NCBI RefSeq assembly: GCF_039654945.1
Contig: NW_027361684.1
Span: 56,854,001-56,918,000, forward strand
Reading direction: 5' to 3'
Length of the DNA: 64,000 nt
Origin: Dendrobates tinctorius
Lineage: Eukaryota
Made by a program: the position numbers and the translations under genes. The stretch's first letter is position 1. Each line of letters begins with the position of its first letter. Below, piece by piece: positions 2,263 through 21,831 of this stretch. The notes under the pieces were generated by a model. It was given only the letters and a program-made list of their open reading frames with translations, was not told the origin of the DNA and searched no databases.

Positions 2263-2418
2263 TTAAAGGAAATACATAAGAGAGACAGAAGATTCGGCAC
2301 TGCTCCTTAACCCCCCAAAGCAGTTCCATGACTGCTATTCAAGTCGAAAATCACACATCTGGACCGACCGCCAAAATACAGTCAGAACGGGTGCTCAATC
2401 CAGAAAAGCAAACATGTA

Positions 2419-2662
2419 ATCTGATTTTGTACAAAAGAGAAAAAAAAGTGATGGCACTCACCGTTCTGTCGTGAAAATTCTTTATTAATTAAAAGGCATT
2501 GGCACGGGAGGAACGTACAGAGAGTGGACAACGGCCGTTTCACTCACTTGCACTTCAACGGGTCCTGATTCCCTCCCGTGCCAATGCCTTTTAATTAATA
2601 AAGAATTTTCACGACAGAACGGTGAGTGCCATCACTTTTTTTTCTCTTTTGTACAAAATCAG
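2419..2662. repeat. Inverted-repeat remnant, Penelope-like pLTR architecture
   Basis: About 90-bp AT-rich arms (2419-2510 vs 2570-2662) containing AATAAA. The spacer reads CCCGTTGAAG...GAAACGGCCG on the minus strand, a degenerate hammerhead-like core. Confidence 0.45.
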
Positions 2663-2883
2663 AATATTTAAAAGGTATTGTTGTAGAGTTACTACTCCTG
2701 TCCATATATTTTATCATAAATTACTGATGCCTAGTGTTGAGCATTCCGATACCGCAAGTATCGGGTATCGGCCGATATTAGCGGTATCAGAATTCCGATA
2801 CCGACTTCCGATACTTTTGTCATATCGGATTCCGGAATCGGAATCGGAAGTTCCCATCATGCTATGAGCCTGCTTGCTTTGAT

Positions 2884-3020
2884 TAAGCCAATGGGAATCC
2901 TCCGAAGTGTGGGCACATCCTGTTAGGCATGTAGGCATGTTAACTATTGGCATGGCTGTGATTGGCTGCCGAAATGATGTCATGATGCACTATAAAAGCC
3001 ACCGCAGCCGCCATTTCTGG
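2884..3020 (+). promoter_or_regulatory. Putative internal Pol II promoter of the hAT element
   Basis: CCAAT near 2889, two reverse CCAAT (ATTGG) near 2946 and 2961, TATAAAAG at 2991-2998, then a YY1-like GCCGCCATTT just downstream. Orientation matches the transposase. Confidence 0.5.
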
Positions 3021-3159
3021 TCACTCTGCTGTGAATTCAGTTAGGGACAGGCTGCTGTAGAAGACTGTGAGGGACAGTTAGAAATAGCGATTCCACCAAA
3101 CATCTAGTGCTTTACCCAGGCTACATAAACCACCACTGTAGCCTTCTTTGCCCTAGCAG

Positions 3160-3910
3160 CAGTGTTCACAGCTGTCTGCAAGGGCTGTGTGAGTGCAGCT
3201 CACGCTGTGGAGTGGGTCCTGCAGCCACGTCAGGCTGTAGGCCACCCAGTGTGATCACTGCTGCCTCATACATCTTTTATTTTTTGAGCTGCATTTTTTA
3301 CATAATTTCAATCTAGTGTGCTTCCATCCGTATCCATATACGTTGGTTGCAAACACTAGTAGTAGACAGCGGAGCCTTTCTGCAGCCTTTCAGTGCTAGT
3401 GTCCACTTTGCTGCACTGTTCACGGCTGTCTGAGAGGTCTCTGACTGTGTGTGAGTGCAGCTCACGCTGAGTAGTGTGTCCTGCAGCTACGTCTGGCTGT
3501 AGGACGCTCAGCGTGCGTCAGTGCCTCACACATATTTTTATTTGAGTGCAGCTCATTTTTTCTTCTATTAGTGTGCATCCATCCGTCTCCATCTACAGTG
3601 GTTGCAAACACTATATAGGAGTACACAGCGGAGCCTTTCTGCAGCCTGTCAGTGCCAGTGCCCACTTAGCTGCACTGTTGACGGCTGTCTGAGAGGTCTC
3701 TGACTGTGTGTGAGTGCAGCTCACGCTGAGTAGAGTGTCCTGCAGCTACGTCTGGTTGTAGGACGCTCAACGTGCGTCACTGCCTCACACATATTTGTCT
3801 TTGAGTGCAGCTCATTTTTTCTTCTCCTATTAGTGTGCATCCATCCGTATCCATCAACATTGGTTGGTTGCAAACACTATATAGGAGTAGATAGAGGAGC
3901 CTTTTTTTCT
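3160..3910 (+). repeat. Three diverged tandem copies of an about 255-260-bp unit in the hAT 5' region
   Basis: GTGTGAGTGCAGCTCACGCTG...TGCAAACACTA...GGAGCCTTT recurs, with units starting near 3163, 3416 and 3675. Confidence 0.8.
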
Positions 3911-4261
3911 GGCTTGTGCCCTGCCGGCGCAGCCAGATTAGTATTACCCAATTTTTTTGGAGCCTCATCTTTTGCATTGTAGGTTACCTGCCTGCATTGT
4001 AATAGCTCCAAAAAGTTGGTGATACTATCAGTTTCAATTCTTTGTTCACATACTTTGAGTTTGTTTCCAACAAAGAAACCACAAAAAAAGTTCACCAAAC
4101 ACTACATTTGGAACTTGTGTAGGCCACATCAGCTCCTATTAAAGTGTAGTCCACACACTTCATAAAATTAGTGTTTCTTGTACTTGTAACCAGCTGTTCA
4201 GGAATAAGCACACTAAGGCCCCCCTTTGTACTTTTCTGCCTATCTTAAGCAGTCTTGCAAG

Positions 4262-4576
4262 ATGAAGAAGGCAGGGAGTAAGGCGCGTGGGCGTGGGCGT
4301 GGAGTTTCAGCAGGGAGAGGACATGGGGATTCTGCAGGGAGAGGATGTGGGGATTCTACAGGTAGAGGACGTGGGGATTCTGGGCCTGCTGCGGGCACCA
4401 GTGGATCAGCATCCCCCAGTTTTAGCAGGCAACAGTCCTTTATGCGCAGCTTTGTAGGACCTCAACGTACCCCACTGCTGCGGGAGGAACAAATTGAAGC
4501 CGTTGTCGGATGGATGGCAGCTAACGCATCGACTTCAATTACTTCCGCATCCTCTCAGGGTCAGAGCACCGAATAG
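4262..4576 (+). CDS. RG-rich N-terminal segment of the hAT transposase, cut off by a single in-frame TAG
   Basis: ATG at 4262 is in the same frame as the 4607-7597 ORF, separated only by TAG at 4574-4576. Encodes MKKAGSKARGRGRGVSAGRGHGDSAGRG... from 21-bp repeats. Confidence 0.65.
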   Translation: MKKAGSKARGRGRGVSAGRGHGDSAGRGCGDSTGRGRGDSGPAAGTSGSASPSFSRQQSFMRSFVGPQRTPLLREEQIEAVVGWMAANASTSITSASSQGQSTE

Positions 4577-4606
4577 CAACCATCTGTCTCTTCACCACCT
4601 GCCAAA

Positions 4607-7597
4607 GTGCCCAGGCAGTCAGAGAGACATGGACAGGAGCCATCACAGTCTCTACTTCTGTTCTCGGAATCTGTTGGCTTGGAAAGAGGGGGCCAGCCAA
4701 GCAGCATTCCTGAATGTGAAGAAGAGGGAGTATGCAGTGATGCGCAACTTCTTTGTCCCTCTGAATCTGAAGAGGCGAGTGGGCCAGTGCCTATGGTCAG
4801 CACACCTCAGTACGCATCAGATGATGACGAGACTCAGTTGCCACTTTCTGGTGCGTACGGTGCTGGCGAGACAACCCCGGAGAAGCAGCTGTTTGAAGAG
4901 GGGAGGGAAGATGATGAGGTCCTTGACCCATCATGGCGTGAGGAACAGGAAGGTGGTGGGAGCAGCTCGGAGGAAGAGATTCCCCTACCGGCCAAAACAG
5001 GAGGCAGAGGGAGGGGGAAGACTTGGTTGCCTGTACCCTCCACTTCGGCACCCGTTAGGAGCATTCCTCATTCCAAAGGCAAACCGGGCGCTCCCAAGAG
5101 TTGCAGTGCGTGGTCCTTTTTTGACACAGTTGCAGATGACATTTGCTTTGTCAAATGCAAGCTGTGTCATCAGAGAGTCAAAAGAGGGAGAAATGTCAGC
5201 AACCTCAATACCACAAATATGTGGAAACATGTGCGCACCAAGCACGAGTTGGAGTTGCAGAGACACCCTGAAGACGTAGGCCAACGTACAGCACCACCTA
5301 CCACCTCTTCAGTTCGTGTTGGGGCCTCTTCCTCCAGCTCACACACTGCTGGTTCGGCTTCCTCACAGGATCGCCAAGGAAGAACCTCTGCCACTGTTGT
5401 CCGGAGACCCTGTCAGATTACACCCATAGCAGCACGTTCCCATCCATCACAGCCATCGGTAGCACAGGCATGGGATAAAAGGCGCCCTTACTCGGCAAAC
5501 CATCCCCGAGCACAGTCTCTGAATGCTGGCATTGCCAAACTTCTGGCAGTTGAAATGCTGTCATTCAGGCTGGTGGACACTGACACCTTCCGGGACTTAA
5601 TGGCATTGGCAGTCCCCCAATACAACGTGCCCAGCCGCTTTTATTTCAGCAGGCGAGCCGTCCCTGCCCTGCAGAAACATGTTGAGGGCAAAATAAAACA
5701 TGCGCTACTAAACGCCGTTAGTAGCAAGGTCCACCTGACCACCGATGCGTGGACCAGTAACCATGGACAGGGACGATACCTTTCCCTCACTGCCCACTGG
5801 GTCAATGTTGTGGAGCCGGGTACGGATCTGGAGAGTGGCGCTGTACGTGTTCTTCCAACGCCACGGATTGCAGGACTCCAGTCTGTACACATAGACTCCT
5901 CCTCCTACTCAAGTTCCTCAGAAACAGCAGAGCAGGAGCCTGTTACGACCGATATGAGCACAGCCGTGGCCAAACGTCAACAGGCTGTACTCAAATTAAT
6001 TTCTTTGGGGAATCGAAGCCACACAGCGCAGGAGCTCTGGAATGCTATCAAGCTGGAGAGCGATGTGTGGTTTGGGCCAGCGAATCTCCAGCCGGGCTTG
6101 GTAGTGTGTGACAATGGCCGAAATCTGGTGGCAGCTCTTGGCCTAGGCAACCTCACACACATCCCATGTCTGGCACATGTTCTTAACTTGGTCGTGCAGA
6201 GCTTTCTGAGGGACTATCCGGATCTTGATGCACTGTTGCACAAGGTCCGCATAGAGTGCGCTCACTTGCGACGTTCCAGCACGGCAAGATCGCGCCTCGC
6301 TGCTCTGCAGCGACGATTTGGCCTTCCGGAACATCGCATCATATGTGACCTACCCACCCGGTGGAATTCAACGTTACATATGTTGGAGCGGTTGTGTGAG
6401 CAGCAGGCAGCAGTTATGGAGTACCAGCTGCATCAGGCGCAAACAAGTCGCACTGTGCGCCGTTCACACTTCAGCACCATTGAGTGGGCCTCTATGAAGG
6501 ACATCTGCCTCGTTTTGCGTGCCTTCGATGAATCCACGCGGATGGCGAGTGCAGATGATGCACTAGTCAGCATGACTGTCCCCCTTATCTGCCTGCTTCA
6601 ACAAACACTGCAAGCACTATGGGATGAGGTTTCGGAAGAGGTGGAGGATGAGGAGTCCCAAATGCCATCTGCTTCTGGACAGTCTGCGCTACGTGTTTCC
6701 TCACAAAGGCCTAGGCAGGGGACACTTTGTGAGGAGGATGAGGAGGAGTCGATGGAGGAGGAAGACATCTCTCCAGAGGAGGGAGGTACACAAACCTCTA
6801 CTCAGTATGTACAGCGAGGGTGGGGTGATGCAGAGCAGGCCGAGGTCACGCCTCAAACAGGGGACAGCGGTTCTTTGGCAGTTGGGAGTCTGCAGCACAT
6901 GGTTGATTTCATGCTGCAGTGCCTGAGAAACGACCGCCGCATCGCCCACATTCTCGTCTCGGCTGATTATTGGGTGTACACCCTCCTAGATCCTCGCTAC
7001 CGGGACAGCGTACAAAGGCTCATACCAACGTTGAACCGGGAGCGTAAAATGCGGGAGTACGAAGAGTCACTGGTGCAGTCCATAATGTTTTCCATTCCAC
7101 CCGACAGCATTGTTGCTATTGCTTTAAAAAGCAGCTCTGTGCGTCGAGGCAGTGGAGGAAACTCTGCACAAAGAGGGAGCAGAGGCAGCGCCGCAGCACA
7201 AGGCAAGACCACTATGGCCCAAATGTGGCAAAGTTTTGTGTGTCCACCACAATTGTCTACAACATCAGCGACGCCTCGAGTCAGCAGGAGGCAACGCTTC
7301 CGTCAGATGGTGTCAGACTACATGTCTTGCCCTGTCGCTGTACTCCCAGATGGCTCTTCCCCCTTCAAGTTTTGGGTCTCTAAGCTGGATACATGGCCAG
7401 AGCTTAGCCAGTATGCATTGGAGGTGCTGGCTTGCCCTGCTGCCAGTGTATTATCGGAACGTGTCTTTAGTGCCGCAGGTGGTGTACTAACAGACCGTCG
7501 CACGCGACTATCTTCCGATAATGTTGACCGGCTGACTTTTCTGAAAATGAACAAGGCCTGGATCTCAAAAGACTTTGCCATTCCTCTTACAGACTAA
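4607..7597 (+). CDS. hAT transposase (ZBED-like: BED zinc finger, RNase H-like DDE core, C-terminal dimerisation domain)
   Basis: BED finger WSFF...CKLC...MWKHVRTKH. Catalytic motifs TTDAW, CDNGRN, CLAH (CxxH), TRWNS and SERVFS. The ORF-track start is GTG; the first in-frame ATG after the TAG is at 4793. Confidence 0.93.
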   Translation: MPRQSERHGQEPSQSLLLFSESVGLERGGQPSSIPECEEEGVCSDAQLLCPSESEEASGPVPMVSTPQYASDDDETQLPLSGAYGAGETTPEKQLFEEGREDDEVLDPSWREEQEGGGSSSEEEIPLPAKTGGRGRGKTWLPVPSTSAPVRSIPHSKGKPGAPKSCSAWSFFDTVADDICFVKCKLCHQRVKRGRNVSNLNTTNMWKHVRTKHELELQRHPEDVGQRTAPPTTSSVRVGASSSSSHTAGSASSQDRQGRTSATVVRRPCQITPIAARSHPSQPSVAQAWDKRRPYSANHPRAQSLNAGIAKLLAVEMLSFRLVDTDTFRDLMALAVPQYNVPSRFYFSRRAVPALQKHVEGKIKHALLNAVSSKVHLTTDAWTSNHGQGRYLSLTAHWVNVVEPGTDLESGAVRVLPTPRIAGLQSVHIDSSSYSSSSETAEQEPVTTDMSTAVAKRQQAVLKLISLGNRSHTAQELWNAIKLESDVWFGPANLQPGLVVCDNGRNLVAALGLGNLTHIPCLAHVLNLVVQSFLRDYPDLDALLHKVRIECAHLRRSSTARSRLAALQRRFGLPEHRIICDLPTRWNSTLHMLERLCEQQAAVMEYQLHQAQTSRTVRRSHFSTIEWASMKDICLVLRAFDESTRMASADDALVSMTVPLICLLQQTLQALWDEVSEEVEDEESQMPSASGQSALRVSSQRPRQGTLCEEDEEESMEEEDISPEEGGTQTSTQYVQRGWGDAEQAEVTPQTGDSGSLAVGSLQHMVDFMLQCLRNDRRIAHILVSADYWVYTLLDPRYRDSVQRLIPTLNRERKMREYEESLVQSIMFSIPPDSIVAIALKSSSVRRGSGGNSAQRGSRGSAAAQGKTTMAQMWQSFVCPPQLSTTSATPRVSRRQRFRQMVSDYMSCPVAVLPDGSSPFKFWVSKLDTWPELSQYALEVLACPAASVLSERVFSAAGGVLTDRRTRLSSDNVDRLTFLKMNKAWISKDFAIPLTD

Positions 7598-7662
7598 ATT
7601 AGTGGTTGGCAACTGTATCCAGGTCTGCTGGTGTGTTCATTTTTCTACCACCTGAACTATAA

Positions 7663-7953
7663 TTCTCATTTGCACAAGGAAAGACTAGAAGCAATGGGAT
7701 GAAACTGAATGGGAAGAGACACAGATTAGATATTAGAAAAAACTTTTTGACAGTTAGAGTGATCAATGAGTGGAACAGGCTGCCACGAGAAGTGGTGAGT
7801 TCTCCTTCAATGGAAGTCTTCAAACAGAGGCTGGACAGACATCTGACTGGGATGATTTAGCGAATCCTGCTTTGAGCAGGGGGTTGGACCAGATGGCCCA
7901 GGAGGTCCCTTCCAACTCTACGATTCTATGATTCTATGATTCTATGATTCTAT
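7663..7953 (+). mobile_element. 5'-truncated CR1 LINE 3' end inserted just after the transposase stop
   Basis: ORF2 C-terminal remnant (RLDIRKNFLTVRVINEWNRLP), GGTCCCTTCCAAC and an (ATTCTATG)n tail typical of CR1. Confidence 0.9.
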
Positions 7954-8104
7954 AATCCCTGTGCTTCAACACAGCCAGTTGTCGCTCAGATGTGTCGTCT
8001 GCACAGAGAAACACACTAGCTCCTGTGTTAGTGGGGTTCAGTAATGCCAGCTGATCCCCTGCTGTATGGACGGCAAAGTCACCAGCTCCATCAACATTCA
8101 AACC

Positions 8105-8509
8105 ACTACTGATTTTTAACCGTGTCCAACTTAGGTCTCTGGCTCCACTGTCTCTACTATTTCCCCTGACCTCCAACCCCGCCATCTACATCTCTGAAGT
8201 GGCGTCAGCACAATCTACACTTGTTCCTGTGGCTCAGTCCCATCAGTTTATCCCCTGATGTGTGTCCGGCAAGGTCTCCTGCTCTGTCCACATTCCCATA
8301 ACCAGTAGTGGGAATGAGGACAGAGCTGGCGAACTTGCCGGACAAACATCAGGGGATCAACTGACGGGACTGAGCACCAGTAACACAGGAACAAGTGTAG
8401 ATTGTGCTGACGCCACTTCAGAGATGTAGCTGGCGGGGTTGGAGGCCAGGGTAAATAGTAGAGACAGTGGAGCCAGAGGCCTAAGTGGAGCATGGTTAGA
8501 ATCAGTAGT
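8105..8509. repeat. Left long inverted repeat (about 200-bp arms, imperfect)
   Basis: ACTACTGATT... pairs with ...AATCAGTAGT, centre near 8300. Arms are diverged homologues of the 180-bp unit. Confidence 0.9.
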
Positions 8510-8562
8510 AGTCCTCAACCTCCATAAAAACCGCTGCCCATTGGCCTCTGCATGCGGCATGC

Positions 8563-10485
8563 GTAATCCTGGGCTCCAACAGTGTCAGTTGGTGTTCAGA
8601 AGTGTCGTCTCCACAGAGCCAAACACATTCGTTCGAGTGTTAGTGGGTTTCAGCACTGCCAGCTGTTCCCCTGCTGTGGAGATGGCAAGTCTCCTGCTGC
8701 CTTCACCTGCCAAAAACAACAGGCCCCAGCCTGCTCCTCGCCTAATCCTGGGCTCCAACAGCGTCAGTTGGTGTTCAGAAGTGTCGTCTCCACAGAGCCA
8801 GACACATTCGTTCAAGTGTTAGTGGGGTTCAGCACTGCCAGCTGTTCCCCTGCTGTGGAGATGGCAAGTCTCCTGCTGCCTTCACCTGCCAAAATCCAGT
8901 AGGCCCCAGCCTGCTCCTCGCCTAATCCTGGGCTCCAACAGCGTCAGTTGGTGTTCAGAAGTGTCGTCTCCACAGAGCCAAACACATTCGTTCAAGTGTT
9001 AGTGGGGTTCAGCACTGCCAGCTGTTCCCCTGCTGTGGAGATGGCAAGTCTCCTGCTGCCTTCACCTGCCAAAATCCAGTAGGCCCCAGCCTGCTCCTCG
9101 CCTAATCCTGGGCTCCAACAGCGTCAGTTGGTGTTCAGAAGTGTTGTCTCCACAGAGCCAGACACATTCGTTCGAGTGTTAGTGGGTTTCAGCACTGCCA
9201 GCTGTTCCCCTGATGTGGAGATGGCAAGTCTCCTGCTGCCTTCACCTGCCAAAATCCAGTAAGCCCCAGCCTGCTCCTCGCCAAATCCTGGGCTCCAACA
9301 GCGTCAGTTGGTGTTCAGAAGTGTCGTCTCCACAGAGCCAAACACATTCGTTCGAGTGTTAGTGGGTTTCAGCACTGCCAGCTGTTCCCCTGCTGTGGAG
9401 ATGGCAAGTCTCCTGCTGCCTTCACCTGCCAAAATCCAGTAGGCCCCAGCCTGCTCCACGCCAAATCCTGGGCTCCAACAGCGTCAGTTGGTGTTCAGAA
9501 GTGTCGTCTCCACAGAGCCAAACACATTCGTTCAAGTGTTAGTGGGTTTCAGCACTGCCAGCTGTTCCCCTGCTGTGGAGATGGCAAGTCTCCTGCTGCC
9601 TTCACCTGCCAAAATCCAGTAGGCCCCAGCCTGCTCCACGCCTAATCCTGGGCTCCAACAGCGTCAGCTGGTGTTCAGAAGTGTCGTCTCCACAGAGCCA
9701 AACACATTCGTTCAAGTGTTAGTGGGTTTCAGCACTGCCAGCTGTTCCCCTGCTGTGGAGATGGCAAGTCTCCTGCTGCCTTCACCTGCCAAAATCCAGT
9801 AGGCCCCAGCCTGCTCCACGCCTAATCCTGGGCTCCAACAGCGTCAGTTGGTGTTCAGAAGTGTCGTCTCCACAGAGCCAAACACATTCGTTCAAGTGTT
9901 AGTGGGGTTCAGCACTGCCAGCTGTTCCCCTGCTGTGGAGATGGCAAGTCTCCTGCTGCCTTCACCTGCCAAAATCCAGTAGGCCCCAGCCTGCTCCTCG
10001 CCAAATCCTGGGCTCCAACAGCGACAGTTGGTGTTCAGAAGTGTCGTCTCCACAGAGCCAAACACATTCGTTCGAGTGTTAGTGGGTTTCAGCACTGCCA
10101 GCTGTTCCCCTGCTGTGGAGATGGCAAGTCTCCTGCTGCCTTCACCTGCCAAAATCCAGTAGGCCCCAGCCTGCTCCTCGCCAAATCCTGGGCTCCAACA
10201 GCGACAGTTGGTGTTCAGAAGTGTCGTCTCCACAGAGCCAAACACATTCGTTCGAGTGTTAGTGGGTTTCAGCACTGCCAGCTGTTCCCCTGCTGTGGAG
10301 ATGGCAAGTCTCCTGCTGCCTTCACCTGCCAAAATCCAGTAGGCCCCAGCCTGCTCCTCGCCTAATCCTGGGCTCCAACAGCGTCAGTTGGTGTTCAGAA
10401 GTGTCGTCTCCACAGAGCCAAACACATTCGTTCAAGTGTTAGTGGGGTTCAGCAATGCCAGCTGTTCCCCTGCTGTGGAGATGGC
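8563..10485 (+). repeat. 180-bp tandem array A (about 10.7 units)
   Basis: AGGCCCCAGCCTGCTCC recurs every 180 bp from 8721 to 10341, with only a few substitutions per unit. Confidence 0.98.
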
Positions 10486-13400
10486 AGTCTCTCCTGCTGT
10501 CTCCGCATTCCAAAGACAGTAGGCCTCTGCCTACACCCTCCTATTTCCTGGGCTTCAACTCAGCCAGTTGTAGCTCGGAAGTGCCGTCCACATGGAAAGA
10601 GATACTTGCTCCCGTGTCTCAGTGGGGTTCAGTAACGTCAGCTGATCCCCTGCTGTGTGGATGGCAGTCTCTCCTGCTGTCACCTCATTCAAAATACAGT
10701 AGGCCTCTGCCTACACCCTCCTATTTCCTGGGCTTCAACACAGCCAGTTGTAGTTCGGAAGTGCCGTCCACACGGAAAGAGATACTTGCTCCCGTGTCTC
10801 AGTGGGGTTCAGTAACGTCAGCTGATCCCCTGCTGTGTGGATGGCAGTCTCTCCTGCTGTCACCTCATTCAAAATACAGTAGGCCTCTGCCTACACCCTC
10901 CAATTTCCTGGGCTTCAACACAGCCAGTTGTAGTTCGGAAGTGCCGTCCACACGGAAAGAGACACTTGCTCCCGTGTCTCAGTGGGGTTCAGTAACGTCA
11001 GCTGATCCCCTGCTGTGTGGATGGCAGTCTCTCCTGCTGTCACCACATTCCAAATACAGTAGGCCTCTGCCTACACCCTCCTATTTCCTGGGCTTCAACA
11101 CAGCCAGTTGTAGTTCGGAAGTGCCGTCCACACGGAAAGAGACACTTGCTCCCGTGTCTCAGTGGGGTTCAGTAACGTCAGCTGATCCCCTGCTGTGTGG
11201 ATGGCAGTCTCTCCTGCTGTCACCACATTCCAAAGACAGTAGGCCTCTGCCTACACCCTCCTATTTCCTGGGCTTCAACTCAGCCAGTTGTAGCTCGGAA
11301 GTGCCGTCCACACGGAAAGAGATACTTGCTCCCGTGTCTCAGTGGGGTTCAGTAACGTCAGCTGATCCCCTGCTGTGTGGATGGCAGTCTCTCCTGCTGT
11401 CACCTCATTCAAAATACAGTAGGCCTCTGCCTACACCCTCCTATTTCCTGGGCTTCAACACAGCCAGTTGTAGTTCGGAAGTGCCGTCCACACGGAAAGA
11501 GATACTTGCTCCCGTGTCTCAGTGGGGTTCAGTAACGTCAGCTGATCCCCTGCTGTGTGGATGGCAGTCTCTCCTGCTGTCACCTCATTCAAAATACAGT
11601 AGGCCTCTGCCTACACCCTCCAATTTCCTGGGCTTCAACACAGCCAGTTGTAGTTCGGAAGTGCCGTCCACACGGAAAGAGACACTTGCTCCCGTGTCTC
11701 AGTGGGGTTCAGTAACGTCAGCTGATCCCCTGCTGTGTGGATGGCAGTCTCTCCTGCTGTCACCACATTCCAAATACAGTAGGCCTCTGCCTACACCCTC
11801 CTATTTCCTGGGCTTCAACACAGCCAGTTGTAGCTCGGAAGTGCCGTCCACACGGAAAGAGACACTTGCTCCCGTGTCTCAGTGGGGTTCAGTAACGTCA
11901 GCTGATCCCCTGCTGTGTGGATGGCAGTCTCTCCTGCTGTCACCTCATTCAAAATACAGTAGGCCTCTGCCTACACCCTCCAATTTCCTGGGCTTCAACA
12001 CAGCCAGTTGTAGTTCGGAAGTGCCGTCCACACGGAAAGAGACACTTGCTCCCGTGTCTCAGTGGGGTTCAGTAACGTCAGCTGATCCCCTGCTGTGTGG
12101 ATGGCAGTCTCTCCTGCTGTCACCTCATTCAAAATACAGTAGGCCTCTGCCTACACCCTCCAATTTCCTGGGCTTCAACTCAGCCAGTTGTAGCTCGGAA
12201 GTGCCGTCCACATGGAAAGAGATACTTGCTCCCGTGTCTCAGTGGGGCTCAGTAACGTCAGCTGATCCCCTGCTGTGTGGATGGCAGTCTCTCCTGCTGT
12301 CACCTCATTCAAAATACAGTAGGCCTCTGCCTACACCCTCCTATTTCCTGGGCTTCAACACAGCCAGTTGTAGTTCGGAAGTGCCGTCCACACGGAAAGA
12401 GATACTTGCTCCCGTGTCTCAGTGGGGTTCAGTAACGTCAGCTGATCCCCTGCTGTGTGGATGGCAGTCTCTCCTGCTGTCACCTCATTCAAAATACAGT
12501 AGGCCTCTGCCTACACCCTCCAATTTCCTGGGCTTCAACACAGCCAGTTGTAGTTCGGAAGTGCCGTCCACACGGAAAGAGACACTTGCTCCCGTGTCCC
12601 AGTGGGGTTCAGTAACGTCAGCTGATCCCCTGCTGTGTGGATGGCAGTCTCTCCTGCTGTCACCTCATTCAAAATACAGTAGGCCTCTGCCTACCCCCTC
12701 CAATTTCCTGGGCTTCAACACAGCCAGTTGTAGTTCGGAAGTGCCGTCCACACGGAAAGAGACACTTGCTCCCGTGTCTCAGTGGGGTTCAGTAACGTCA
12801 GCTGATCCCCTGCTGTGTGGATGGCAGTCTCTCCTGCTGTCACCACATTCCAAATACAGTAGGCCTCTGCCTACACCCTCCTATTTCCTGGACTTCAACA
12901 CAGCCAGTTGTAGCTCGGAAGTGCCGTCCACACGGAAAGAGACACTTGCTCCCGTGTCTCAGTGGGGTTCAGTAACGTCAGCTGATCCCCTGCTGTGTGG
13001 ATGGCAGTCTCTCCTGCTGTCACCTCATTCAAAATACAGTAGGCCTCTGCCTACACCCTCCAATTTCCTGGGCTTCAACTCAGCCAGTTGTAGCTCGGAA
13101 GTGCCGTCCACATGGAAAGAGATACTTGCTCCCGTGTCTCAGTGGGGTTCAGTAACGTCAGCTGATCCCCTGCTGTGTGGATGGCAGTCTCTCCTGCTGT
13201 CACCTCATTCAAAATACAGTAGGCCTCTGCCTACACCCTCCTATTTCCTGGGCTTCAACACAGCCAGTTGTAGTTCGGAAGTGCCGTCCACACGGAAAGA
13301 GATACTTGCTCCCGTGTCTCAGTGGGGTTCAGTAACGTCAGCTGATCCCCTGCTGTGTGGATGGCAGTCTCTCCTGCTGTCACCTCATTCAAAATACAGT

Positions 13401-14820
13401 AGGCCTCTGCCTACACCCTCCTATTTCCTGGGCTTCAACACAGCCAGTTGTAGTTCGGAAGTGCCGTCCACACGGAAAGAGATACTTGCTCCCGTGTCTC
13501 AGTGGGGTTCAGTAACGTCAGCTGATCCCCTGCTGTGTGGATGGCAGTCTCTCCTGCTGTCACCTCATTCAAAATACAGTAGGCCTCTGCCTACACCCTC
13601 CAATTTCCTGGGCTTCAACACAGCCAGTTGTAGTTCGGAAGTGCCGTCCACACGGAAAGAGACACTTGCTCCCGTGTCTCAGTGGGGTTCAGTAACGTCA
13701 GCTGATCCCCTGCTGTGTGGATGGCAGTCTCTCCTGCTGTCACCTCATTCAAAATACAGTAGGCCTCTGCCTACTCCCTCCTATTTCCTGGGCTTCAACA
13801 CAGCCAGTTGTAGTTCGGAAGTGCCGTCCACACGGAAAGAGACACTTGCTCCCGTGTCTCAGTGGGGTTCAGTAACGTCAGCTGATCCCCTGCTGTGTGG
13901 ATGGCAGTCTCTCCTGCTGTCACCACATTCCAAATACAGTAGGCCTCTGCCTACACCCTCCTATTTCCTGGACTTCAACACAGCCAGTTGTAGCTCGGAA
14001 GTGCCGTCCACACGGAAAGAGACACTTGCTCCCGTGTCTCAGTGGGGTTCAGTAACGTCAGCTGATCCCCTGCTGTGTGGATGGCAGTCTCTCCTGCTGT
14101 CACCTCATTCAAAATACAGTAGGCCTCTGCCTACACCCTCCAATTTCCTGGGCTTCAACTCAGCCAGTTGTAGCTCGGAAGTGCCGTCCACATGGAAAGA
14201 GATACTTGCTCCCGTGTCTCAGTGGGGTTCAGTAACGTCAGCTGATCCCCTGCTGTGTGGATGGCAGTCTCTCCTGCTGTCACCTCATTCAAAATACAGT
14301 AGGCCTCTGCCTACACCCTCCTATTTCCTGGGCTTCAACACAGCCAGTTGTAGTTCGGAAGTGCCGTCCACACGGAAAGAGATACTTGCTCCCGTGTCTC
14401 AGTGGGGTTCAGTAACGTCAGCTGATCCCCTGCTGTGTGGATGGCAGTCTCTCCTGCTGTCACCTCATTCAAAATACAGTAGGCCTCTGCCTACACCCTC
14501 CAATTTCCTGGGCTTCAACACAGCCAGTTGTAGTTCGGAAGTGCCGTCCACACGGAAAGAGACACTTGCTCCCGTGTCTCAGTGGGGTTCAGTAACGTCA
14601 GCTGATCCCCTGCTGTGTGGATGGCAGTCTCTCCTGCTGTCACCTCATTCAAAATACAGTAGGCCTCTGCCTACTCCCTCCTATTTCCTGGGCTTCAACA
14701 CAGCCAGTTGTAGTTCGGAAGTGCCGTCCACACGGAAAGAGACACTTGCTCCCGTGTCTCAGTGGGGTTCAGTAACGTCAGCTGATCCCCTGCTGTGTAG
14801 ATGGCAAAGTCTCCTGCTGC
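10486..14820 (+). repeat. 180-bp tandem array B (about 24 units), in phase with array A
   Basis: AGGCCTCTGCCTAC recurs every 180 bp from 10521 to 14661. About 65% ungapped identity to the A unit by manual comparison. Confidence 0.98.
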
Positions 14821-14835
14821 CTACACAGTCGTACC

Positions 14836-15241
14836 ACTACTGATTTTTAACCGTGCTCCAATTAGGCCTGTGGCTCCACTGTCTCTCGTATTTCCCCTGT
14901 CCTCCAACCCTGCCAGTTACAGCTCCGAAGTGGCGTCTGCACAATCCACACTTGTTCCTGTGTTACAGGTGTTCAGTCCGGTCAGTTAATCCCCTGATGT
15001 GTGTCCGGCAATGTCGCCTGCTCTGTCCACATTCCCATTATGGGAATGTGGACAGAGCAGGCGACATTGCCGGACACACATCAGGGGATTAACTGACCGG
15101 ACTGAACACCTGTAACACAGGAACAAGTGTGGATTGTGCAGACGCCACTTCGGAGCTGTAACTGGCAGGGTTGGAGGACAGGGGAAATACGAAAATCAGT
15201 GAAGCCACAGGCCTAAGTGGAGCTTGGTTAAAATTAGTAGT
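14836..15241. repeat. Right long inverted repeat with about 153-bp perfect arms
   Basis: 14886-15038 is the exact reverse complement of 15040-15192 with a 1-nt spacer. Imperfect pairing extends to 14836/15241. Confidence 0.95.
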
Positions 15242-15800
15242 CTACAACCGATATTAAATTTTCTTCAATGCAGCCTCAGCCTGCTCCGTGCTTGTCCCTG
15301 GGCTTCAACACAGCCAGTTGTTGCTCGGAAGTGCCGTCTTCACAGAGTAAAACACTAGCTCCTGTGTTTGTGGGGTTCAGTAACGTCAGCTGTTCCCCTG
15401 CTGTTTTGATGGCAATCTGTCCTGCTGCCTCCCAATTGACAGCACATCAGGCCTCAGCCTGCTAAGTGCTTGTCCTGGGCTCCAACATCGCCAGTTGCTG
15501 CTCATAACTGACTTTGGCACGGGTACTCCCTCCTGCCCAGCTTGGTTCCAGCCCTGCCTGCTGTTTCCGGGAAGTGTCAATGTCAGTTTGCCACCCCAAG
15601 TTGCCATGTCGTGTTGCGGTTGGGTTAGCCGAGGCTAGGGTGCCAGCAGTTTAGGTGCTTCCTATGTGGACTGCGGGTTCTGGTAAGAAAGGCTTGTTCC
15701 ATAGTGCCAGTAGGACAAGCACCCCCTGTAGGACTGTGTGATTCGGTAACTGCGGCCAGCTTGCGGCATGCCAACTTTGCTTTTCAGGGGTAACTTCTGA

Positions 15801-16829
15801 TACCCCTCCGGGTTCCAGCACCGTCAGCTGGTTCTCGTCAGAGCCTTTGGCCTAGGTGCCTCCATCTCGGTATCCGAGTTCCGGCAACGTCTGCTGGTCC
15901 TTGGTAGTGCTTTGTAGCACAGGTACCTCCTGCTTAGTAACCGGGTTCCAGCACCGTCAGCTGGTCCTCGGTTGTGCCATTGGCTCTTATTCCTTCTGCT
16001 GCCCCTCCGGGTGCCAGCACTGTCAGCTGGTCCTCGCTATTTCCATTTGCTCTTGCAGCTTATGCTACCCCTCCGGGTTCCAGCACCGTCAGCTGGTTCT
16101 CGTCAGAGCCTTTGGCCTAGGTGCCTCCATCTCGGTATCCGAGTTCCGGCAACGTCTGCTGGTCCTTGGTAGTGCTTTGTAGCACAGGTACCTCCTGCTT
16201 AGTAACCGGGTTCCAGCACCGTCTGCTGGTCCTCGGTTGTGCCATTGGCTCTTATTCCTTCTGCTGCCCCTCCGGGTGCCAGCACTGTCAGCTGGTCCTC
16301 GCTATTTACATTTGCTCTTGCAGCTTATGCTACCCCTCCGGGTTCCAGCACCGTCAGCTGGTTCTCGTCAGAGCCTTTGGCCTAGGTGCCTCCATCTCGG
16401 TATCCGAGTTCCGGCAACGTCTGCTGGTCCTTGGTAGTGCTTTGTAGCACAGGTACCTCCTGCTTAGTAACCGGGTTCCAGCACCGTCTGCTGGTCCTCG
16501 GTTGTGCCATTGGCTCTTATTCCTTCTGCTGCCCCTCCGGGTGCCAGCACTGTCAGCTGGTCCTCGCTATTTACATTTGCTCTTGCAGCTTATGCTACCC
16601 CTCCGGGTTCCAGCACCGTCAGCTGGTTCTCGTCAGAGCCTTTGGCCTAGGTGCCTCCATCTCGGTATCCGAGTTCCGGCAACGTCTGCTGGTCCTTGGT
16701 AGTGCTTTGTAGCACAGGTACCTCCTGCTTAGTAACCGGGTTCCAGCACCGTCAGCTGGTCCTCGGTAGTGCCATTGGCTCTTGTTCCTTCTGCTGCCCC
16801 TCCAGGTGCCAGTACCGTCAGCTGGTTCA
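15801..16829 (+). repeat. 265-bp tandem array C (about 3.9 units), each unit with four copies of the shared 27-nt stem-loop
   Basis: TACCCCTCCGGGTTCCAGCACCGTCAGCTGG at 15801, 16066, 16331 and 16596. Confidence 0.95.
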
Positions 16830-17159
16830 AGAGGACAAAGAACAGGAAGACAACCACCAAGATGCAGAACAACAAGAGAGAGAAGACAAAGAAGCATAAA
16901 AAAAACAAAGCAGAAGAACATTAAGCATAAGACTAATACTCTGAGCAAATGATATTATCTTATTTATAAGCAGAAGACGACTAAGCAGTGTATGGGGGTG
17001 AGTCCGTTCCTCCTCGTGGTGCCCCTGGAAAAGGCCTGCTGCTGCAGGCCAAACTGAACGCGGACAAATCTTGTTGTAAATCTTTTGTGACAGGCAGAAC
17101 GGAAGGTGTAAACTTCTAACTTTTCTAGATAACAACTACAGGAATGCCTGACACAAACA

Positions 17160-17492
17160 AGAATATGATGAAGAAGAATAGGAAGAAGATGAAGAAGTTG
17201 AATATGTAGAATAATAATTGTTGAATAAGAAGAATATGAAGAATGTAAGAAAAGGAAGAAGAAGAAGAATGTAAAAAAAGGAAGTAGAAGAATTTAAAAA
17301 AGGAAGAAGAAGAAGAATGTAAAAAAAGGAATAAGAAGAAGAATGTAAAAAAAGGAAGAAGAAGAAGAATGTAAAAAAAGGAAGAAGAAGAAGAATGTAA
17401 AAAAAGGAAGTAGAAGAATGTAAAAAAAGGAAGAAGAAGAAGAAGAAGAAGGTAAAAAAGGGAAGAAGAATAAGAAAGAAGAAAGAAGAAGA
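17160..17492 (+). repeat. Purine-rich (GAA)n / AAGAATGTAAAAAAAGG minisatellite inside the hAT 3' end
   Basis: Repeated GAAGAAGAAGAATGTAAAAAAAG units. Confidence 0.9.
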
Positions 17493-18169
17493 CATACATG
17501 TCTGCCAAAATATAAATAAGGCTAACATAGTCAATATCTTTGTAACTCCTAACGTCTTTAAAAAAAAAGTTTAATTCCTGCTATTCCTTTTGATTGGGCT
17601 AAAACTCTATGGCTTTAATGTCTCCTCCACCTCCCACAATACATTCTACATTATTCTTAGTTGTTTTTCTTCATGTAGAATTAACCTACAAGGAAAGAAA
17701 GGGTTTTTTTTAATTCCGATATTTTGGCCCCATTGACTTGCATTGGTTACCGGTATCGGAATCGGCGATACCGATATTTTTTTTTAAGATCGGCCGATCC
17801 ATTCCGATCCGATATTTTCAAGTATCGGCTGGTATCGCTCAACTCTACTGATGCCATAAAGTACGAGTTTCAGAGCAGCCTCTCTAGGAGCCAGAACATA
17901 AGTCTACTTTTTAAGTCCATGCATAACATGGTCAGGTATTCACTTATATGGCTGAAATATAATGTTAGATTTCTCCAGAAAAAGCCTCTGTCAAAAAGGA
18001 AGCTGCAAACTTTTTAGAAAGTGGTTGTCTTCATGAGAAGATCCTTTTAGCATAGATGGTGTTAGCTACTGCTAACAACACAGAACATATAATATTTCAA
18101 GTAAATCTTTAGAAATGATATGGCATATGGATGCAGTTTGCGAGACATACCCTTTACATGCCTAAAGCT

Positions 18170-21547: not shown

Positions 21548-21831
21548 TAGTGATGAGCAAGTGTGCCCATTACTCGAGATTTCCGAGCATGCTTGGGTGA
21601 TCTCTGAGTATTTTGGGTGTGCTCGGAGATTTAGTTTGTGTTGCCGCAGCTGCATGATTTGTGGCTGCTAGACAGCCTGAATACATCTGGATATTCCCTA
21701 ACAAACAGGCAACCCCCACATGTATTCAGGCTGTCTAGCAGCCACAAATCATGCAGCTGCGGCAACACAAACTAAATCTCTGAGCACTTCCAAATACTCT
21801 GAGAACACCCGAGCATACTCGCTCAATACTA
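21548..21831. mobile_element. Non-autonomous hAT MITE with termini related to the giant hAT
   Basis: TAGTGATGAGC...GCTCAATACTA termini, degenerate 8-bp TSD GTTCCGAT/CTTCCGAC, internal palindrome. Confidence 0.8.

What the first reader, a model, noticed from the sequence alone, without database searches (positions are those of the whole stretch)
7960..16830. About 90 copies of one 27-nt stem-loop with compensatory changes, shared by three otherwise different arrays
Seen in sequence: every array is built around a 10+7+10 hairpin. A1 GGGCTCCAAC-AGCGTCA-GTTGGTGTTC (e.g. 8930). A2 GGGGTTCAGC-ACTGCCA-GCTGTTCCCC (9004). B1 GGGCTTCAAC-ACAGCCA-GTTGTAG(T/C)TC (10730). B2 GGGGTTCAGT-AACGTCA-GCTGATCCCC (10804). 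C1 GGGTTCCAGC-ACCGTCA-GCTGGTTCTC (15810). C2 GAGTTCCGGC-AACGTCT-GCTGGTCCTT. C4 GGGTGCCAGC-ACTGTCA-GCTGGTCCTC. CAAC/GTTG swaps with CAGC/GCTG (co-variation). Many imperfect pairs are G-U on the + strand (they would be A-C on the minus strand), and a T/C polymorphism in B1 toggles G-U to G-C. A mid-stem pyrimidine-pyrimidine mismatch and the loop A-N-N-G-Y-C-A are retained while spacers and periods (180 vs 265 bp) differ. Inference: selection on an RNA structure in a transposase-sense transcript, forming a multivalent protein-binding array (localisation, condensate scaffold or anti-silencing decoy). The transposase's RG-rich N-terminus is one candidate reader.
Basis: partly seen in the sequence, partly recalled or inferred. 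Interest (0 to 1): 0.9.

Follow-up and report, generated by a model that had tools for sequence, protein, structure and literature searches.

The report
Hairpin-core satellite inside frog hAT transposon

Summary
The motif is real: 87 matches to its 21-nt core plus 4 C2 copies, all on the + strand at 7961-16830, where 0.04 are expected. The arrays are not "otherwise different". The A/B units (180 bp = 74 + 106) and the C unit (265 bp = 4 x 66) are built from homologous monomers. Everything lies inside a 15,116-bp autonomous hAT transposon (2732-17847, 8-bp target duplication CTGATGCC). The first motif starts about 70 nt after the transposase stop codon, once a private CR1-like insertion is removed.

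The 27-nt core is better conserved than the spacers, and it keeps 8-9 of 10 pairs across 8-9 stem substitutions (P about 0.004-0.1). The loop is as conserved as the stem. The robust covariation measures are not significant. Variants within the arrays break pairs freely. Replication template switching can also produce compensatory changes.

Pairing is better on the + strand (82.9% versus 72.1%). No AATAAA lies between the stop codon and 15253. Libraries flagged "RNA?" hold the arrays, but their RNA nature and the strand could not be checked.

Verdict: a transposon-borne higher-order satellite with a constrained dyad core; the RNA-scaffold reading is possible but unproven. Other unchecked notes of this scan describe similar arrays behind other hAT transposases in this genome.

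The parts
2724..2742 (+). 8-bp target-site duplication CTGATGCC (2724-2731) and 5' terminal inverted repeat TAGTGTTGAGC (2732-2742) of the hAT element
   Evidence: Read directly. The pattern search finds the inverted partner at 17837-17847.
2743..2870 (+). 5' subterminal repeats (GATACCG / CGGTATC / CCGATA motifs), the likely BED-finger binding sites
   Evidence: Motif census; sequence. The same motifs recur at 17716-17831.
3186..3904 (+). 259-bp repeat x 2.7 upstream of the ORF. Each copy carries an ~88-nt hairpin whose tip (CAGC-TACGTCTG-GCTG) resembles the array motif.
   Evidence: TRF. Fold: -56.8 kcal/mol, z -6.4.
4262..7597 (+). hAT transposase: RG-rich N-terminal part (4262-4573), in-frame TAG at 4574-4576, then the main ORF 4607-7597 with a BED zinc finger and the hAT dimerisation domain
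   Evidence: Pfam; translations. The N-terminus is homologous to that of P0003. The best relative is 79% identical (Ranitomeya variabilis).
7657..7949 (+). 293-bp CR1-like LINE 3' fragment with an (ATTCTATG)n tail; a secondary insertion private to this copy, flanked by CTATAAT
   Evidence: Contigs in X1 and X16 join 7656 to 7950. Word depth here is 10^4-10^5, against 16-700 on the ORF.
7951..8110 (+). First array unit F1 (one type-1 and one type-2 monomer; hairpins at 7961 and 8033)
   Evidence: The junction with the ORF flank is shared by other copies and by organism B.
8105..8510 (.). Fold-back P1. Each arm is one diverged full array unit, and the 27-nt dyads within it have decayed.
   Evidence: Inverted repeats; alignment of the arms to the units.
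8563..10480 (+). Array A, 180-bp unit x about 10.6 (hairpins A1 and A2)
   Evidence: An identical 210-nt circular unitig is present in run X1.
10481..14820 (+). Array B, 180-bp unit x about 24 (hairpins B1 and B2, plus a weaker third hairpin GGCAGT-CTCTCCT-GCTGTC). Variants recur every 4-6 units.
   Evidence: An identical 210-nt unitig is present in X1.
14845..15233 (.). Fold-back P2, with 194-nt arms 96% complementary and 88% like P1
15290..15532 (+). Degenerate units F2 (type-1, type-2, type-1 monomers; hairpins at 15300, 15372 and 15477). The ATTAAA at 15253 lies just upstream.
15790..16830 (+). Array C, 265-bp unit x 3.9. Each unit holds four 66-bp monomers (C1-C4), each with one hairpin.
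16831..17500 (+). Purine-rich stretch and 26-bp (GAAGAAGAAGAATGTAAAAAAAG)n repeats
17700..17855 (+). 3' subterminal repeats, 3' terminal inverted repeat GCTCAACTCTA (17837-17847) and target-site duplication CTGATGCC (17848-17855)

Best explanation
Shown: the hairpins are the dyad-symmetric core of one ancestral monomer of about 66-74 bp. That monomer has been amplified into three higher-order tandem arrays: A and B (180 bp = a 74-bp type-1 plus a 106-bp type-2 monomer) and C (265 bp = 4 x 66). Two fold-backs are each made of an inverted pair of diverged units. All of this lies in the non-coding region between the transposase stop codon and the right end of a 15.1-kb autonomous hAT DNA transposon, which inserted as one piece.

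Inferred: the arrays behave as a transposon-borne satellite. They grow, shrink and reshuffle by unequal exchange and by slippage during replication or gap repair. The quasi-palindromic core is kept alike, and kept self-complementary, mainly by DNA-level processes. Hairpin-prone dyads stall synthesis. They provoke short-range template switching and short-tract conversion between neighbouring monomers. This homogenises the 27-nt block, loop included, and makes the two arms complementary again without selection on an RNA.

On this reading the motif is the engine and the best-preserved relic of the array, not a proven functional RNA module.
For: - Element boundaries: TIR and a perfect 8-bp TSD; transposase domains.
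- Monomer homology extends beyond the hairpin.
- A and B are 64% identical and in phase.
- Variants in B recur every 4-6 units, which points to block duplications.
- Other copies carry different junctions: B followed by A, or the ORF flank joined directly to an A-type unit in organism B.
- The fold-back arms are whole inverted units, the expected product of template switching.
- Array word depth is only about 5-8 times that of the ORF in both the 'RNA?' and the '?' libraries, so the arrays travel with the transposon rather than forming a separate satellite.
- Within-array stem variants are as frequent as spacer variants, and most break pairs.
- Pair retention is equally significant when only Watson-Crick pairs are counted.
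- The loop is as conserved as the stem, as expected if whole 27-nt tracts are co-converted.
- Published work shows that replication template switching creates and maintains hairpins and produces apparent compensatory substitutions (PMC8794818), and that it homogenises inverted-repeat arms (PMC8604942).
- Transposon-internal tandem repeats that seed satellites are known (Tetris, PMC4079207).
Against: - Template switching would tend to make the arms perfect, yet every monomer type keeps 1-3 mid-stem mismatches and + strand G-T wobbles.
- The invariant positions C7, G14, C16, G18, T20 and G21 hold across monomer types whose spacers have diverged to 34-56% identity. They are lost in the fold-back arms (G21 to A). 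This looks like purifying selection specific to the arrayed copies.
- The sense orientation, and a start about 70 nt behind the stop codon that is shared with a second species, suggest a link to the transcript. Unchecked notes of this scan report the same arrangement at other hAT copies in this genome.
- No direct evidence for conversion tracts was obtained.
Confidence: 0.42

Rival explanations
1. The arrays are part of a long 3' untranslated region, or read-through tail, of the transposase mRNA. Each monomer folds into a short RNA hairpin: a 4-bp apical stem, an internal loop and a 3-4-bp G-rich base, with a 7-nt loop ANNGYCA. This hairpin is a sequence- and structure-specific binding site for a protein. 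The array would then be a multivalent platform for localisation, stability, or escape from or feeding of silencing.
For: - The + strand pairs better (82.9% versus 72.1%; 28 versus 2 G-U cells) and folds 1-3 kcal/mol better in most types.
- All fixed wobble changes are G-U on the + strand. All three stem changes in C2 keep pairing.
- Double changes occur at pairs 4-24, 9-19 and 6-22.
- Conserved loop bases together with a variable but paired stem and a tolerated internal loop is the classic signature of a protein-bound hairpin.
- The arrays start about 70 nt after the stop codon, with no AATAAA/ATTAAA on the + strand until 15253.
- A 209-nt contig in library X1 ('RNA?') bridges the ORF end and the first unit at the ORF's depth. 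Units A and B are present there as exact unitigs.
- RNAalifold predicts only this hairpin.
- Frogs have a precedent for localised tandem-repeat RNAs: Xlsirts, described as non-coding, highly repetitive, tandemly organised RNAs of the METRO pathway (PMC9624338).
Against: - There is no strand information and no DNA-contamination control.
- The array-to-ORF depth ratio is the same in 'RNA?' and '?' libraries.
- The robust covariation measures are not significant, and only a few independent events underlie them.
- Recent variants break pairs, and the commonest A2 form is the less-paired one.
- The hairpins are weak. In a tandem context they compete with inter-unit pairing.
- There is no Rfam match.
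- A DNA transposon has no evident need for such an RNA.
Confidence: 0.28
2. The motif is read as double-stranded DNA. It would be a clustered binding site for a host transcription factor (invariant E-box CAGYTG, with a CGTCA half-CRE in many copies) or for a transposon protein. The arrays would then act as an enhancer, a chromatin platform or a transposase sink.
For: - The most invariant block is linear and asymmetric (A11, G14, C16-A17-G18-Y19-T20-G21). It straddles the loop and the 3' arm, and the loop is as conserved as the stem.
- Conserved boxes in satellites are usually protein-binding sites (general knowledge).
- Tandem repeats that carry many transposase-binding sites are known in Galileo (PMC3688188).
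Against: - A linear site does not explain the conserved G-rich and Y-rich outer arms, or the coupled changes at 9-19 and 4-24. Only 1 of 24 variants mixes CAAC with GCTG.
- The element's own subterminal motif (GATACCG / CCGATA, at both ends) is unrelated to the dyad. That motif is the likelier BED-finger target, by analogy with ZBED1/DREF binding TATCGATA (from my own knowledge).
- The arrays lie 1-10 kb from the ends, unlike hAT subterminal sites.
Confidence: 0.15
3. The B array (ORF 10455-14843, 1462 codons open) encodes a repetitive protein, and the conservation reflects coding constraint.
For: One + frame of the 180-bp B unit has no stop codon.
Against: - Every frame of the homologous A unit has a stop.
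- No Pfam family passes its threshold, and no protein in 5.8 billion shares words with it.
- One open frame among six in a 60-codon unit is expected by chance about 30% of the time.
Confidence: 0.01

Closest known systems
Transposon-borne internal tandem repeats that seed satellites (Tetris fold-back element of Drosophila virilis, PMC4079207; Galileo, PMC3688188)
   Same: Tandem arrays with units of about 150-260 bp are carried within the boundaries of a DNA transposon. The forms are modular and rearranged, fold-back structures occur, and arrangements differ between copies.
   Different: In Tetris and Galileo the repeats sit inside long terminal inverted repeats, and in Galileo they carry transposase-binding sites. 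Here the TIRs are short (11 bp). The arrays lie between the transposase stop codon and the 3' subterminal region of an autonomous hAT element. They are built from one monomer with a conserved 27-nt dyad, and they do not appear to form a separate satellite (depth only about 5-8 times the ORF).
Quasi-palindromes shaped by replication template switching (PMC8794818, PMC8604942)
   Same: Short imperfect inverted repeats whose arms change in a coupled way, and inverted duplications next to them.
   Different: Those studies concern single hairpins in genes or rRNA. Here the hairpin is multiplied about 90 times, and it keeps characteristic mismatches instead of becoming perfect.
Xlsirt repeat RNAs of Xenopus oocytes (as summarised in PMC9624338; repeat length of 79-81 nt recalled from memory)
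   Same: A frog system with tandem repeats of tens of nucleotides.
   Different: No sequence comparison was possible. Transcription, strand and localisation are all untested here. This array is part of a hAT transposon.
hAT subterminal transposase-binding repeats (Ac AAACGG, Hermes GTGGC; from my own knowledge)
   Same: A short motif repeated many times within a hAT element, with a related hairpin on the 5' side as well (3186-3904).
   Different: Those sites lie within a few hundred bp of the ends, are short linear motifs and occur in both orientations. This element has its own such motif (GATACCG/CCGATA) at both ends, unrelated to the dyad.
Xenopus '1723' element (Kay and Dawid 1983; recalled from memory, not found in the paper library)
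   Same: As I recall it, a long interspersed frog element with inverted ends, an 8-bp target duplication and internal tandem-repeat regions of variable length.
   Different: The details could not be checked, and no hairpin-core motif is known to me from it.

Membership tests
hAT superfamily DNA transposon (the container) | 8-bp target-site duplication | tested here: met
   CTGATGCC at 2724-2731 and at 17848-17855.
hAT superfamily DNA transposon (the container) | Short terminal inverted repeats | tested here: met
   TAGTGTTGAGC versus TAGAGTTGAGC on the opposite strand, 10 of 11 bases matching.
hAT superfamily DNA transposon (the container) | Transposase with a BED zinc finger and the hAT C-terminal dimerisation domain | tested here: met
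   PF02892 at 6e-8 and PF05699 at 4e-14. Relatives are annotated as ZBED-like in dendrobatid frogs. This copy has one in-frame TAG at 4574-4576.
Transposon-borne satellite (Tetris / fold-back type) | Tandem repeats inside the element's boundaries, with arrangements that differ between copies | tested here: met
   The arrays at 7951-16830 lie inside 2732-17847. Contig joints in other copies differ from this one.
Transposon-borne satellite (Tetris / fold-back type) | Repeats form part of long terminal inverted repeats | tested here: not met
   The TIRs are 11 bp. All arrays share one orientation, on the 3' side of the ORF.
Transposon-borne satellite (Tetris / fold-back type) | The same repeats also form long arrays outside the element | tested here: inconclusive
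   Word depth of units A and B is only about 5-8 times that of the ORF. Depth from collapsed contigs is a poor copy-number measure.
Structured functional RNA element | Statistically supported covariation | tested here: inconclusive
   Cells paired reach 82.9%, and the covariation score is 0.299 versus 0.224 in shuffles (0/500). But the measures robust to relatedness are not significant (275/500 and 500/500). The simulated P of 0.004-0.1 holds with Watson-Crick pairs alone.
Structured functional RNA element | Transcribed on the strand that folds | tested here: inconclusive
   Only undirected contigs from libraries flagged 'RNA?' were available, with no silent-stretch control.
Structured functional RNA element | Match to a described RNA family | tested here: not met
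   Rfam at E up to 1 gives only sub-threshold miRNA-like hits on the fold-back centres, on both strands. No tRNA was found.
hAT subterminal transposase-binding repeats | Located within a few hundred bp of both ends and related to the element's subterminal motif | tested here: not met
   The dyads lie 1-10 kb from the ends. The subterminal motif is GATACCG/CCGATA. CGGTATC occurs once per C unit, which may be chance.
E-box (CANNTG) binding-site cluster | Invariant CANNTG in every copy | tested here: met
   Columns 16-21 read CAGYTG in 22 of the 24 distinct variants, because A17 is T in C2 and C3v. C16, G18, T20 and G21 are invariant.
E-box (CANNTG) binding-site cluster | Bound by a bHLH factor, with enhancer activity | not testable with these tools
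   This needs gel-shift, ChIP or reporter assays.

The most novel reading that the evidence does not exclude
A lineage of poison-frog hAT transposons carries, directly behind the transposase stop codon, arrays of a protein-recognised RNA hairpin (G-rich base, internal loop, 4-bp tip, loop ANNGYCA). These arrays make the transposase mRNA a multivalent ribonucleoprotein platform, for example for germ-plasm localisation, for protecting a very long 3' UTR, or for titrating a silencing factor. The flanking 190-bp fold-backs would supply double-stranded RNA that tunes the element's own activity. This would be a new kind of cis-acting RNA module for a cut-and-paste transposon.
Probability: 0.15. Interest if true: 0.8.

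Novelty: new variant of a known kind. Interest (0 to 1): 0.4.

Why it matters
hAT elements make up several per cent of dendrobatid genomes: 3.9% in Dendrobates tinctorius (PMC11152451) and 255 Mb in Oophaga pumilio (PMC6278860). The papers I could search do not mention arrays of this kind.

If the dyad is only a by-product of slippage and template switching, this locus is a clean worked example of two things. One is how a transposon's non-coding tail turns into higher-order satellite DNA and inflates a giant genome. The other is how DNA-level processes can mimic RNA covariation.

If the motif is instead read as an RNA hairpin, it would be an unusual cis-regulatory device for a DNA transposon. 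It would also give a handle on how such elements stay active in frog germlines.

Tried and rejected
Searches and retrievals that led nowhere:
- Cross-species retrieval of array DNA failed. The look-up of encoding contigs returned no DNA for the Ranitomeya, Dendrobates and R. imitator assemblies because the files are too large.
- Two short contigs of more distant relatives, L001 and L002, have no motif in their flanks. L001 does have a tandem repeat of about 320 bp upstream of its ORF.
- I searched the translated B unit as a way to fish array contigs from other assemblies. No candidate was found.
- The degenerate motif was scanned against metagenome contigs. It gave 26 single hits, about the number I estimated from the pattern's information content and a guessed collection size, and no arrays.
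- Rfam and tRNA scans found nothing relevant.
I resent a stretch with fewer copies, as the tool advised.

Readings I rejected:
- The CR1-like tail at 7657-7949 is not part of the array system. It is a private insertion.
- The 1462-codon ORF in array B is not a gene.
- A tRNA or SINE origin of the monomer has no support.
- An assembly artefact is unlikely, because exact 210-nt unitigs of units A and B occur in independent runs.

Not attempted:
- I did not build a covariance model. It could only be searched against this window, and it cannot separate an RNA dyad from a DNA dyad.

Full report
WHAT IS THERE

The window is from an anuran, most likely a dendrobatid (poison-frog) genome. The 996-codon ORF at 4607-7597 carries a BED zinc finger and the hAT dimerisation domain. 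Its best relatives are ZBED-like proteins of Ranitomeya variabilis (79% identity), Phyllobates, Dendrobates and Anomaloglossus.

The finding lies wholly inside one transposon. The 5' end reads CTGATGCC|TAGTGTTGAGC at 2724-2742. The 3' end reads GCTCAACTCTA|CTGATGCC at 17837-17855. These are 11-bp inverted termini and a perfect 8-bp target duplication around a 15,116-bp hAT element. Both ends carry the same subterminal motif, GATACCG/CCGATA.

It is homologous to the N-terminus of a relative's continuous transposase (P0003). In this copy an in-frame TAG at 4574-4576 separates it from the main ORF.

LAYOUT OF THE 3' REGION

The parts run in this order:
- Stop codon at 7595-7597.
- A 293-bp CR1-like LINE tail at 7657-7949.
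- One array unit, F1, at 7951-8110.
- Fold-back P1 at 8105-8510.
- Array A at 8563-10480 (180 bp x 10.6).
- Array B at 10481-14820 (180 bp x 24).
- Fold-back P2 at 14845-15233 (194-nt arms, 96% complementary).
- Degenerate units F2 at 15290-15532.
- About 260 bp of unique sequence.
- Array C at 15790-16830 (265 bp x 3.9, each unit being four 66-bp monomers).
- A purine-rich AAG-type repeat.
- The 3' subterminal region.

Upstream of the ORF there is a 259-bp repeat x 2.7 (3186-3904). Each copy folds into an 88-nt hairpin (-56.8 kcal/mol, z -6.4). Its tip, CAGC-TACGTCTG-GCTG, resembles the array motif.

CHECK OF THE OBSERVATION

The core pattern GGGNNNCARYANNGYCAGYTG, with at most one mismatch, occurs 87 times. 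All hits are on the + strand and lie between 7961 and 16824. Only 0.04 are expected by chance. The four C2 copies bring the total to about 91. All quoted sequences and positions are right.

These copies collapse to 24 distinct sequences and roughly 13 semi-independent monomer lineages. The rest are identical units of homogenised arrays.

The claim that the arrays are otherwise different does not hold. A MAFFT alignment of all monomer types shows homology over about 65 nt, including GGWAGTGCC immediately 3' of the hairpin and a TGGC block. The 180-bp unit is a dimer of a 74-bp type-1 monomer and a 106-bp type-2 monomer. The 265-bp unit is a tetramer. A and B are 64% identical and in phase, and they share several conserved blocks besides the hairpins. 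The arms of P1 and P2 are whole, diverged units. So everything descends from one monomer.

IS THE DYAD CONSTRAINED?

Yes, moderately.
- Within C, stem identity is 0.88, loop 0.79 and the rest 0.56.
- Between type 1 and type 2 the values are 0.61, 0.69 and 0.34.
- Between the A and B consensus units, stems are 34/40 identical against 85/127 elsewhere (P = 0.03).
- Type-1 and type-2 hairpins differ at 8-9 of 20 stem positions yet keep 8-9 of 10 pairs. Random substitution reached this in 0.4-10% of trials.
- Double changes that keep pairing occur at 9-19 (A-U/G-C), 4-24 (C-G/G-C) and 6-22 (C-G/U-A).
- RNAalifold on the 13 monomers returns this hairpin as the only consensus structure.
- In the fold-back arms, where the unit is not arrayed, the dyads have decayed, for example through G21 to A in both motifs of P2.

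IS IT AN RNA STRUCTURE?

The evidence in favour is as follows.
- The + strand pairs better than the - strand (82.9% versus 72.1% of cells; 28 versus 2 G-U cells).
- Most hairpins fold 1-3 kcal/mol better on the + strand.
- All copies are in the transposase sense.
- Without the CR1 insertion, the first hairpin starts about 70 nt after the stop codon.
- The + strand has no AATAAA or ATTAAA between the stop codon and 15253, just after P2.

The evidence against is as follows.
- The two covariation measures that are robust to relatedness are not significant (275/500 and 500/500 shuffles).
- The simulation is as significant with Watson-Crick pairs alone, so it does not distinguish DNA from RNA.
- The loop positions A11, G14, C16 and A17, and the hexamer CAGYTG that straddles the loop and the 3' arm, are as conserved as the stem.
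- Within-array polymorphisms are not depleted in stems (Fisher P 0.7-1.0), and three of five break pairs. The majority A2 form (T4-C24) is the less-paired one.
- The hairpins are weak (-5 to -13.5 kcal/mol). In a tandem context hairpin 2 prefers to pair with the next unit.
- Rfam has nothing.
- Replication template switching is documented to create and maintain hairpins, to mimic compensatory substitutions, and to homogenise inverted-repeat arms (PMC8794818, PMC8604942). So coupled arm changes in a DNA quasi-palindrome do not need selection on RNA.

EVIDENCE FROM PUBLIC RUNS

Runs flagged 'RNA?' of organism A hold about 40% of the sampled words of 7600-17500. Runs of a second organism, B, hold 5-8%. 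Only Logan contigs, which carry no direction, were available.

On 6400-12100 the results were these.
- Contigs in X1 and X16 join 7656 to 7950. The CR1 piece is therefore private to this copy, and the junction between the ORF flank and the first unit is a family feature.
- In organism B, a contig joins 7663 directly to an A-type unit start (8747). The array therefore begins at the same place in a second species.
- Units A and B occur in X1 as exact 210-nt unitigs (180 + 30, the signature of a collapsed tandem repeat). This rules out an assembly artefact.
- Word depth in X1 is 16-23 on the ORF, 86 on A and 138 on B. In X16 it is 350-720 on the ORF and about 3400 on B. The arrays therefore track the transposon at roughly 5-8 times the ORF depth in both kinds of library. 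This fits either DNA or unspliced RNA.
- Other copies join B to A, so the arrangement varies between copies.

Transcription and strand remain untested. No more reads could be laid, so no silent-DNA control could be laid.

MECHANISM

Shown: a higher-order satellite built from one monomer, carried as internal cargo of an autonomous hAT element. It has block duplications (variants recurring every 4-6 B units), inverted unit duplications (P1, P2) and copy-to-copy rearrangement.

Inferred (0.42): growth by unequal exchange and repair slippage. The quasi-palindromic core is kept alike, and kept self-complementary, by short-range template switching and short-tract conversion.

Rivals:
- A protein-bound RNA hairpin array in the transposase's 3' tail (0.28).
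- A double-stranded DNA binding-site cluster built on the invariant CAGYTG (0.15).
- A coding repeat (0.01). It is rejected because all frames of A carry stops and no homologue exists.

COMPARISON WITH KNOWN SYSTEMS

The nearest described things are transposon-internal tandem repeats that seed satellites (Tetris, PMC4079207; Galileo, PMC3688188). There, however, the repeats are part of long terminal inverted repeats. Here they lie between the stop codon and the 3' subterminal region of an autonomous hAT.

The genome papers on poison frogs that I could search report abundant hAT elements but no such arrays (PMC11152451, PMC6278860).

Nothing here tests it.

Unchecked first-reader notes of this scan describe similar ANNGYCA stem-loop arrays behind other hAT transposases in the same genome (s1-386052, s1-376973), and a variable cargo region in this hAT family (s1-389117). 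If they are right, the feature belongs to the family, which modestly raises the chance of a function.

VERDICT

The RNA-scaffold interpretation can be neither confirmed nor excluded. The most economical reading is a transposon-borne satellite with a constrained dyad core: a new variant of a known kind, of moderate interest.

Noticed in passing
window 7657-7949: A CR1-like LINE 3' fragment with an (ATTCTATG)n tail, flanked by CTATAAT, is inserted in the hAT element between the ORF flank and the first array unit. It is hugely abundant in all four runs (word depth 10^4-10^5) and absent from other copies of the hAT.
   Followed up: partly
window 4574-4576: An in-frame TAG separates the conserved RG-rich N-terminal part of the transposase (from ATG 4262) from the main ORF. 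This otherwise young-looking copy, with its perfect target duplication, probably cannot make the full-length protein.
   Followed up: partly
window 3186-3904: A 259-bp repeat x 2.7 lies upstream of the transposase. Each copy forms an 88-nt hairpin (-56.8 kcal/mol) whose tip resembles the array motif. A 50%-identical relative (L001:1-680) also has a tandem repeat of about 320 bp upstream of its ORF.
   Followed up: partly
window 8105-8510 and 14845-15233: Two fold-backs (arms about 190 nt, 88-96% complementary) bracket arrays A and B. If transcribed, they would give long double-stranded RNA. Rfam reports only sub-threshold miRNA-like hits at their centres, on both strands.
   Followed up: partly
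window 10550-14170: Array B has a higher-order pattern. The loop variant TCAGCCA recurs at 10550, 11270, 12170, 13070 and 14150. The variant GGAC recurs at 12890 and 13970. This indicates duplications of blocks of 4-6 units.
   Followed up: no
window 15868, 16133, 16398, 16663: The heptamer CGGTATC, identical to the element's subterminal motif, occurs once in every 265-bp C unit. This may be chance followed by amplification.
   Followed up: no
window 21548-21831: A small element has hAT-like ends (TAGTGATGAGC ... GCTCAATACTA) and an internal 88-nt-arm palindrome (21612-21794). It is probably a non-autonomous relative (MITE).
   Followed up: no
window 23119-23991 (- strand): A 290-codon ORF carries the Tc1/Sleeping Beauty-type transposase HTH domains (PF01498, PF25787). 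It is a Tc1-like element remnant.
   Followed up: no
window 2417-2666: Another fold-back (95-nt arms, 99% complementary, 60 nt apart) lies just outside the 5' end of the hAT element.
   Followed up: no
window 10455-14843: A 1462-codon ORF runs through array B only because one frame of the 180-bp unit lacks a stop. It has no homologue and no domain, and could mislead gene callers.
   Followed up: yes
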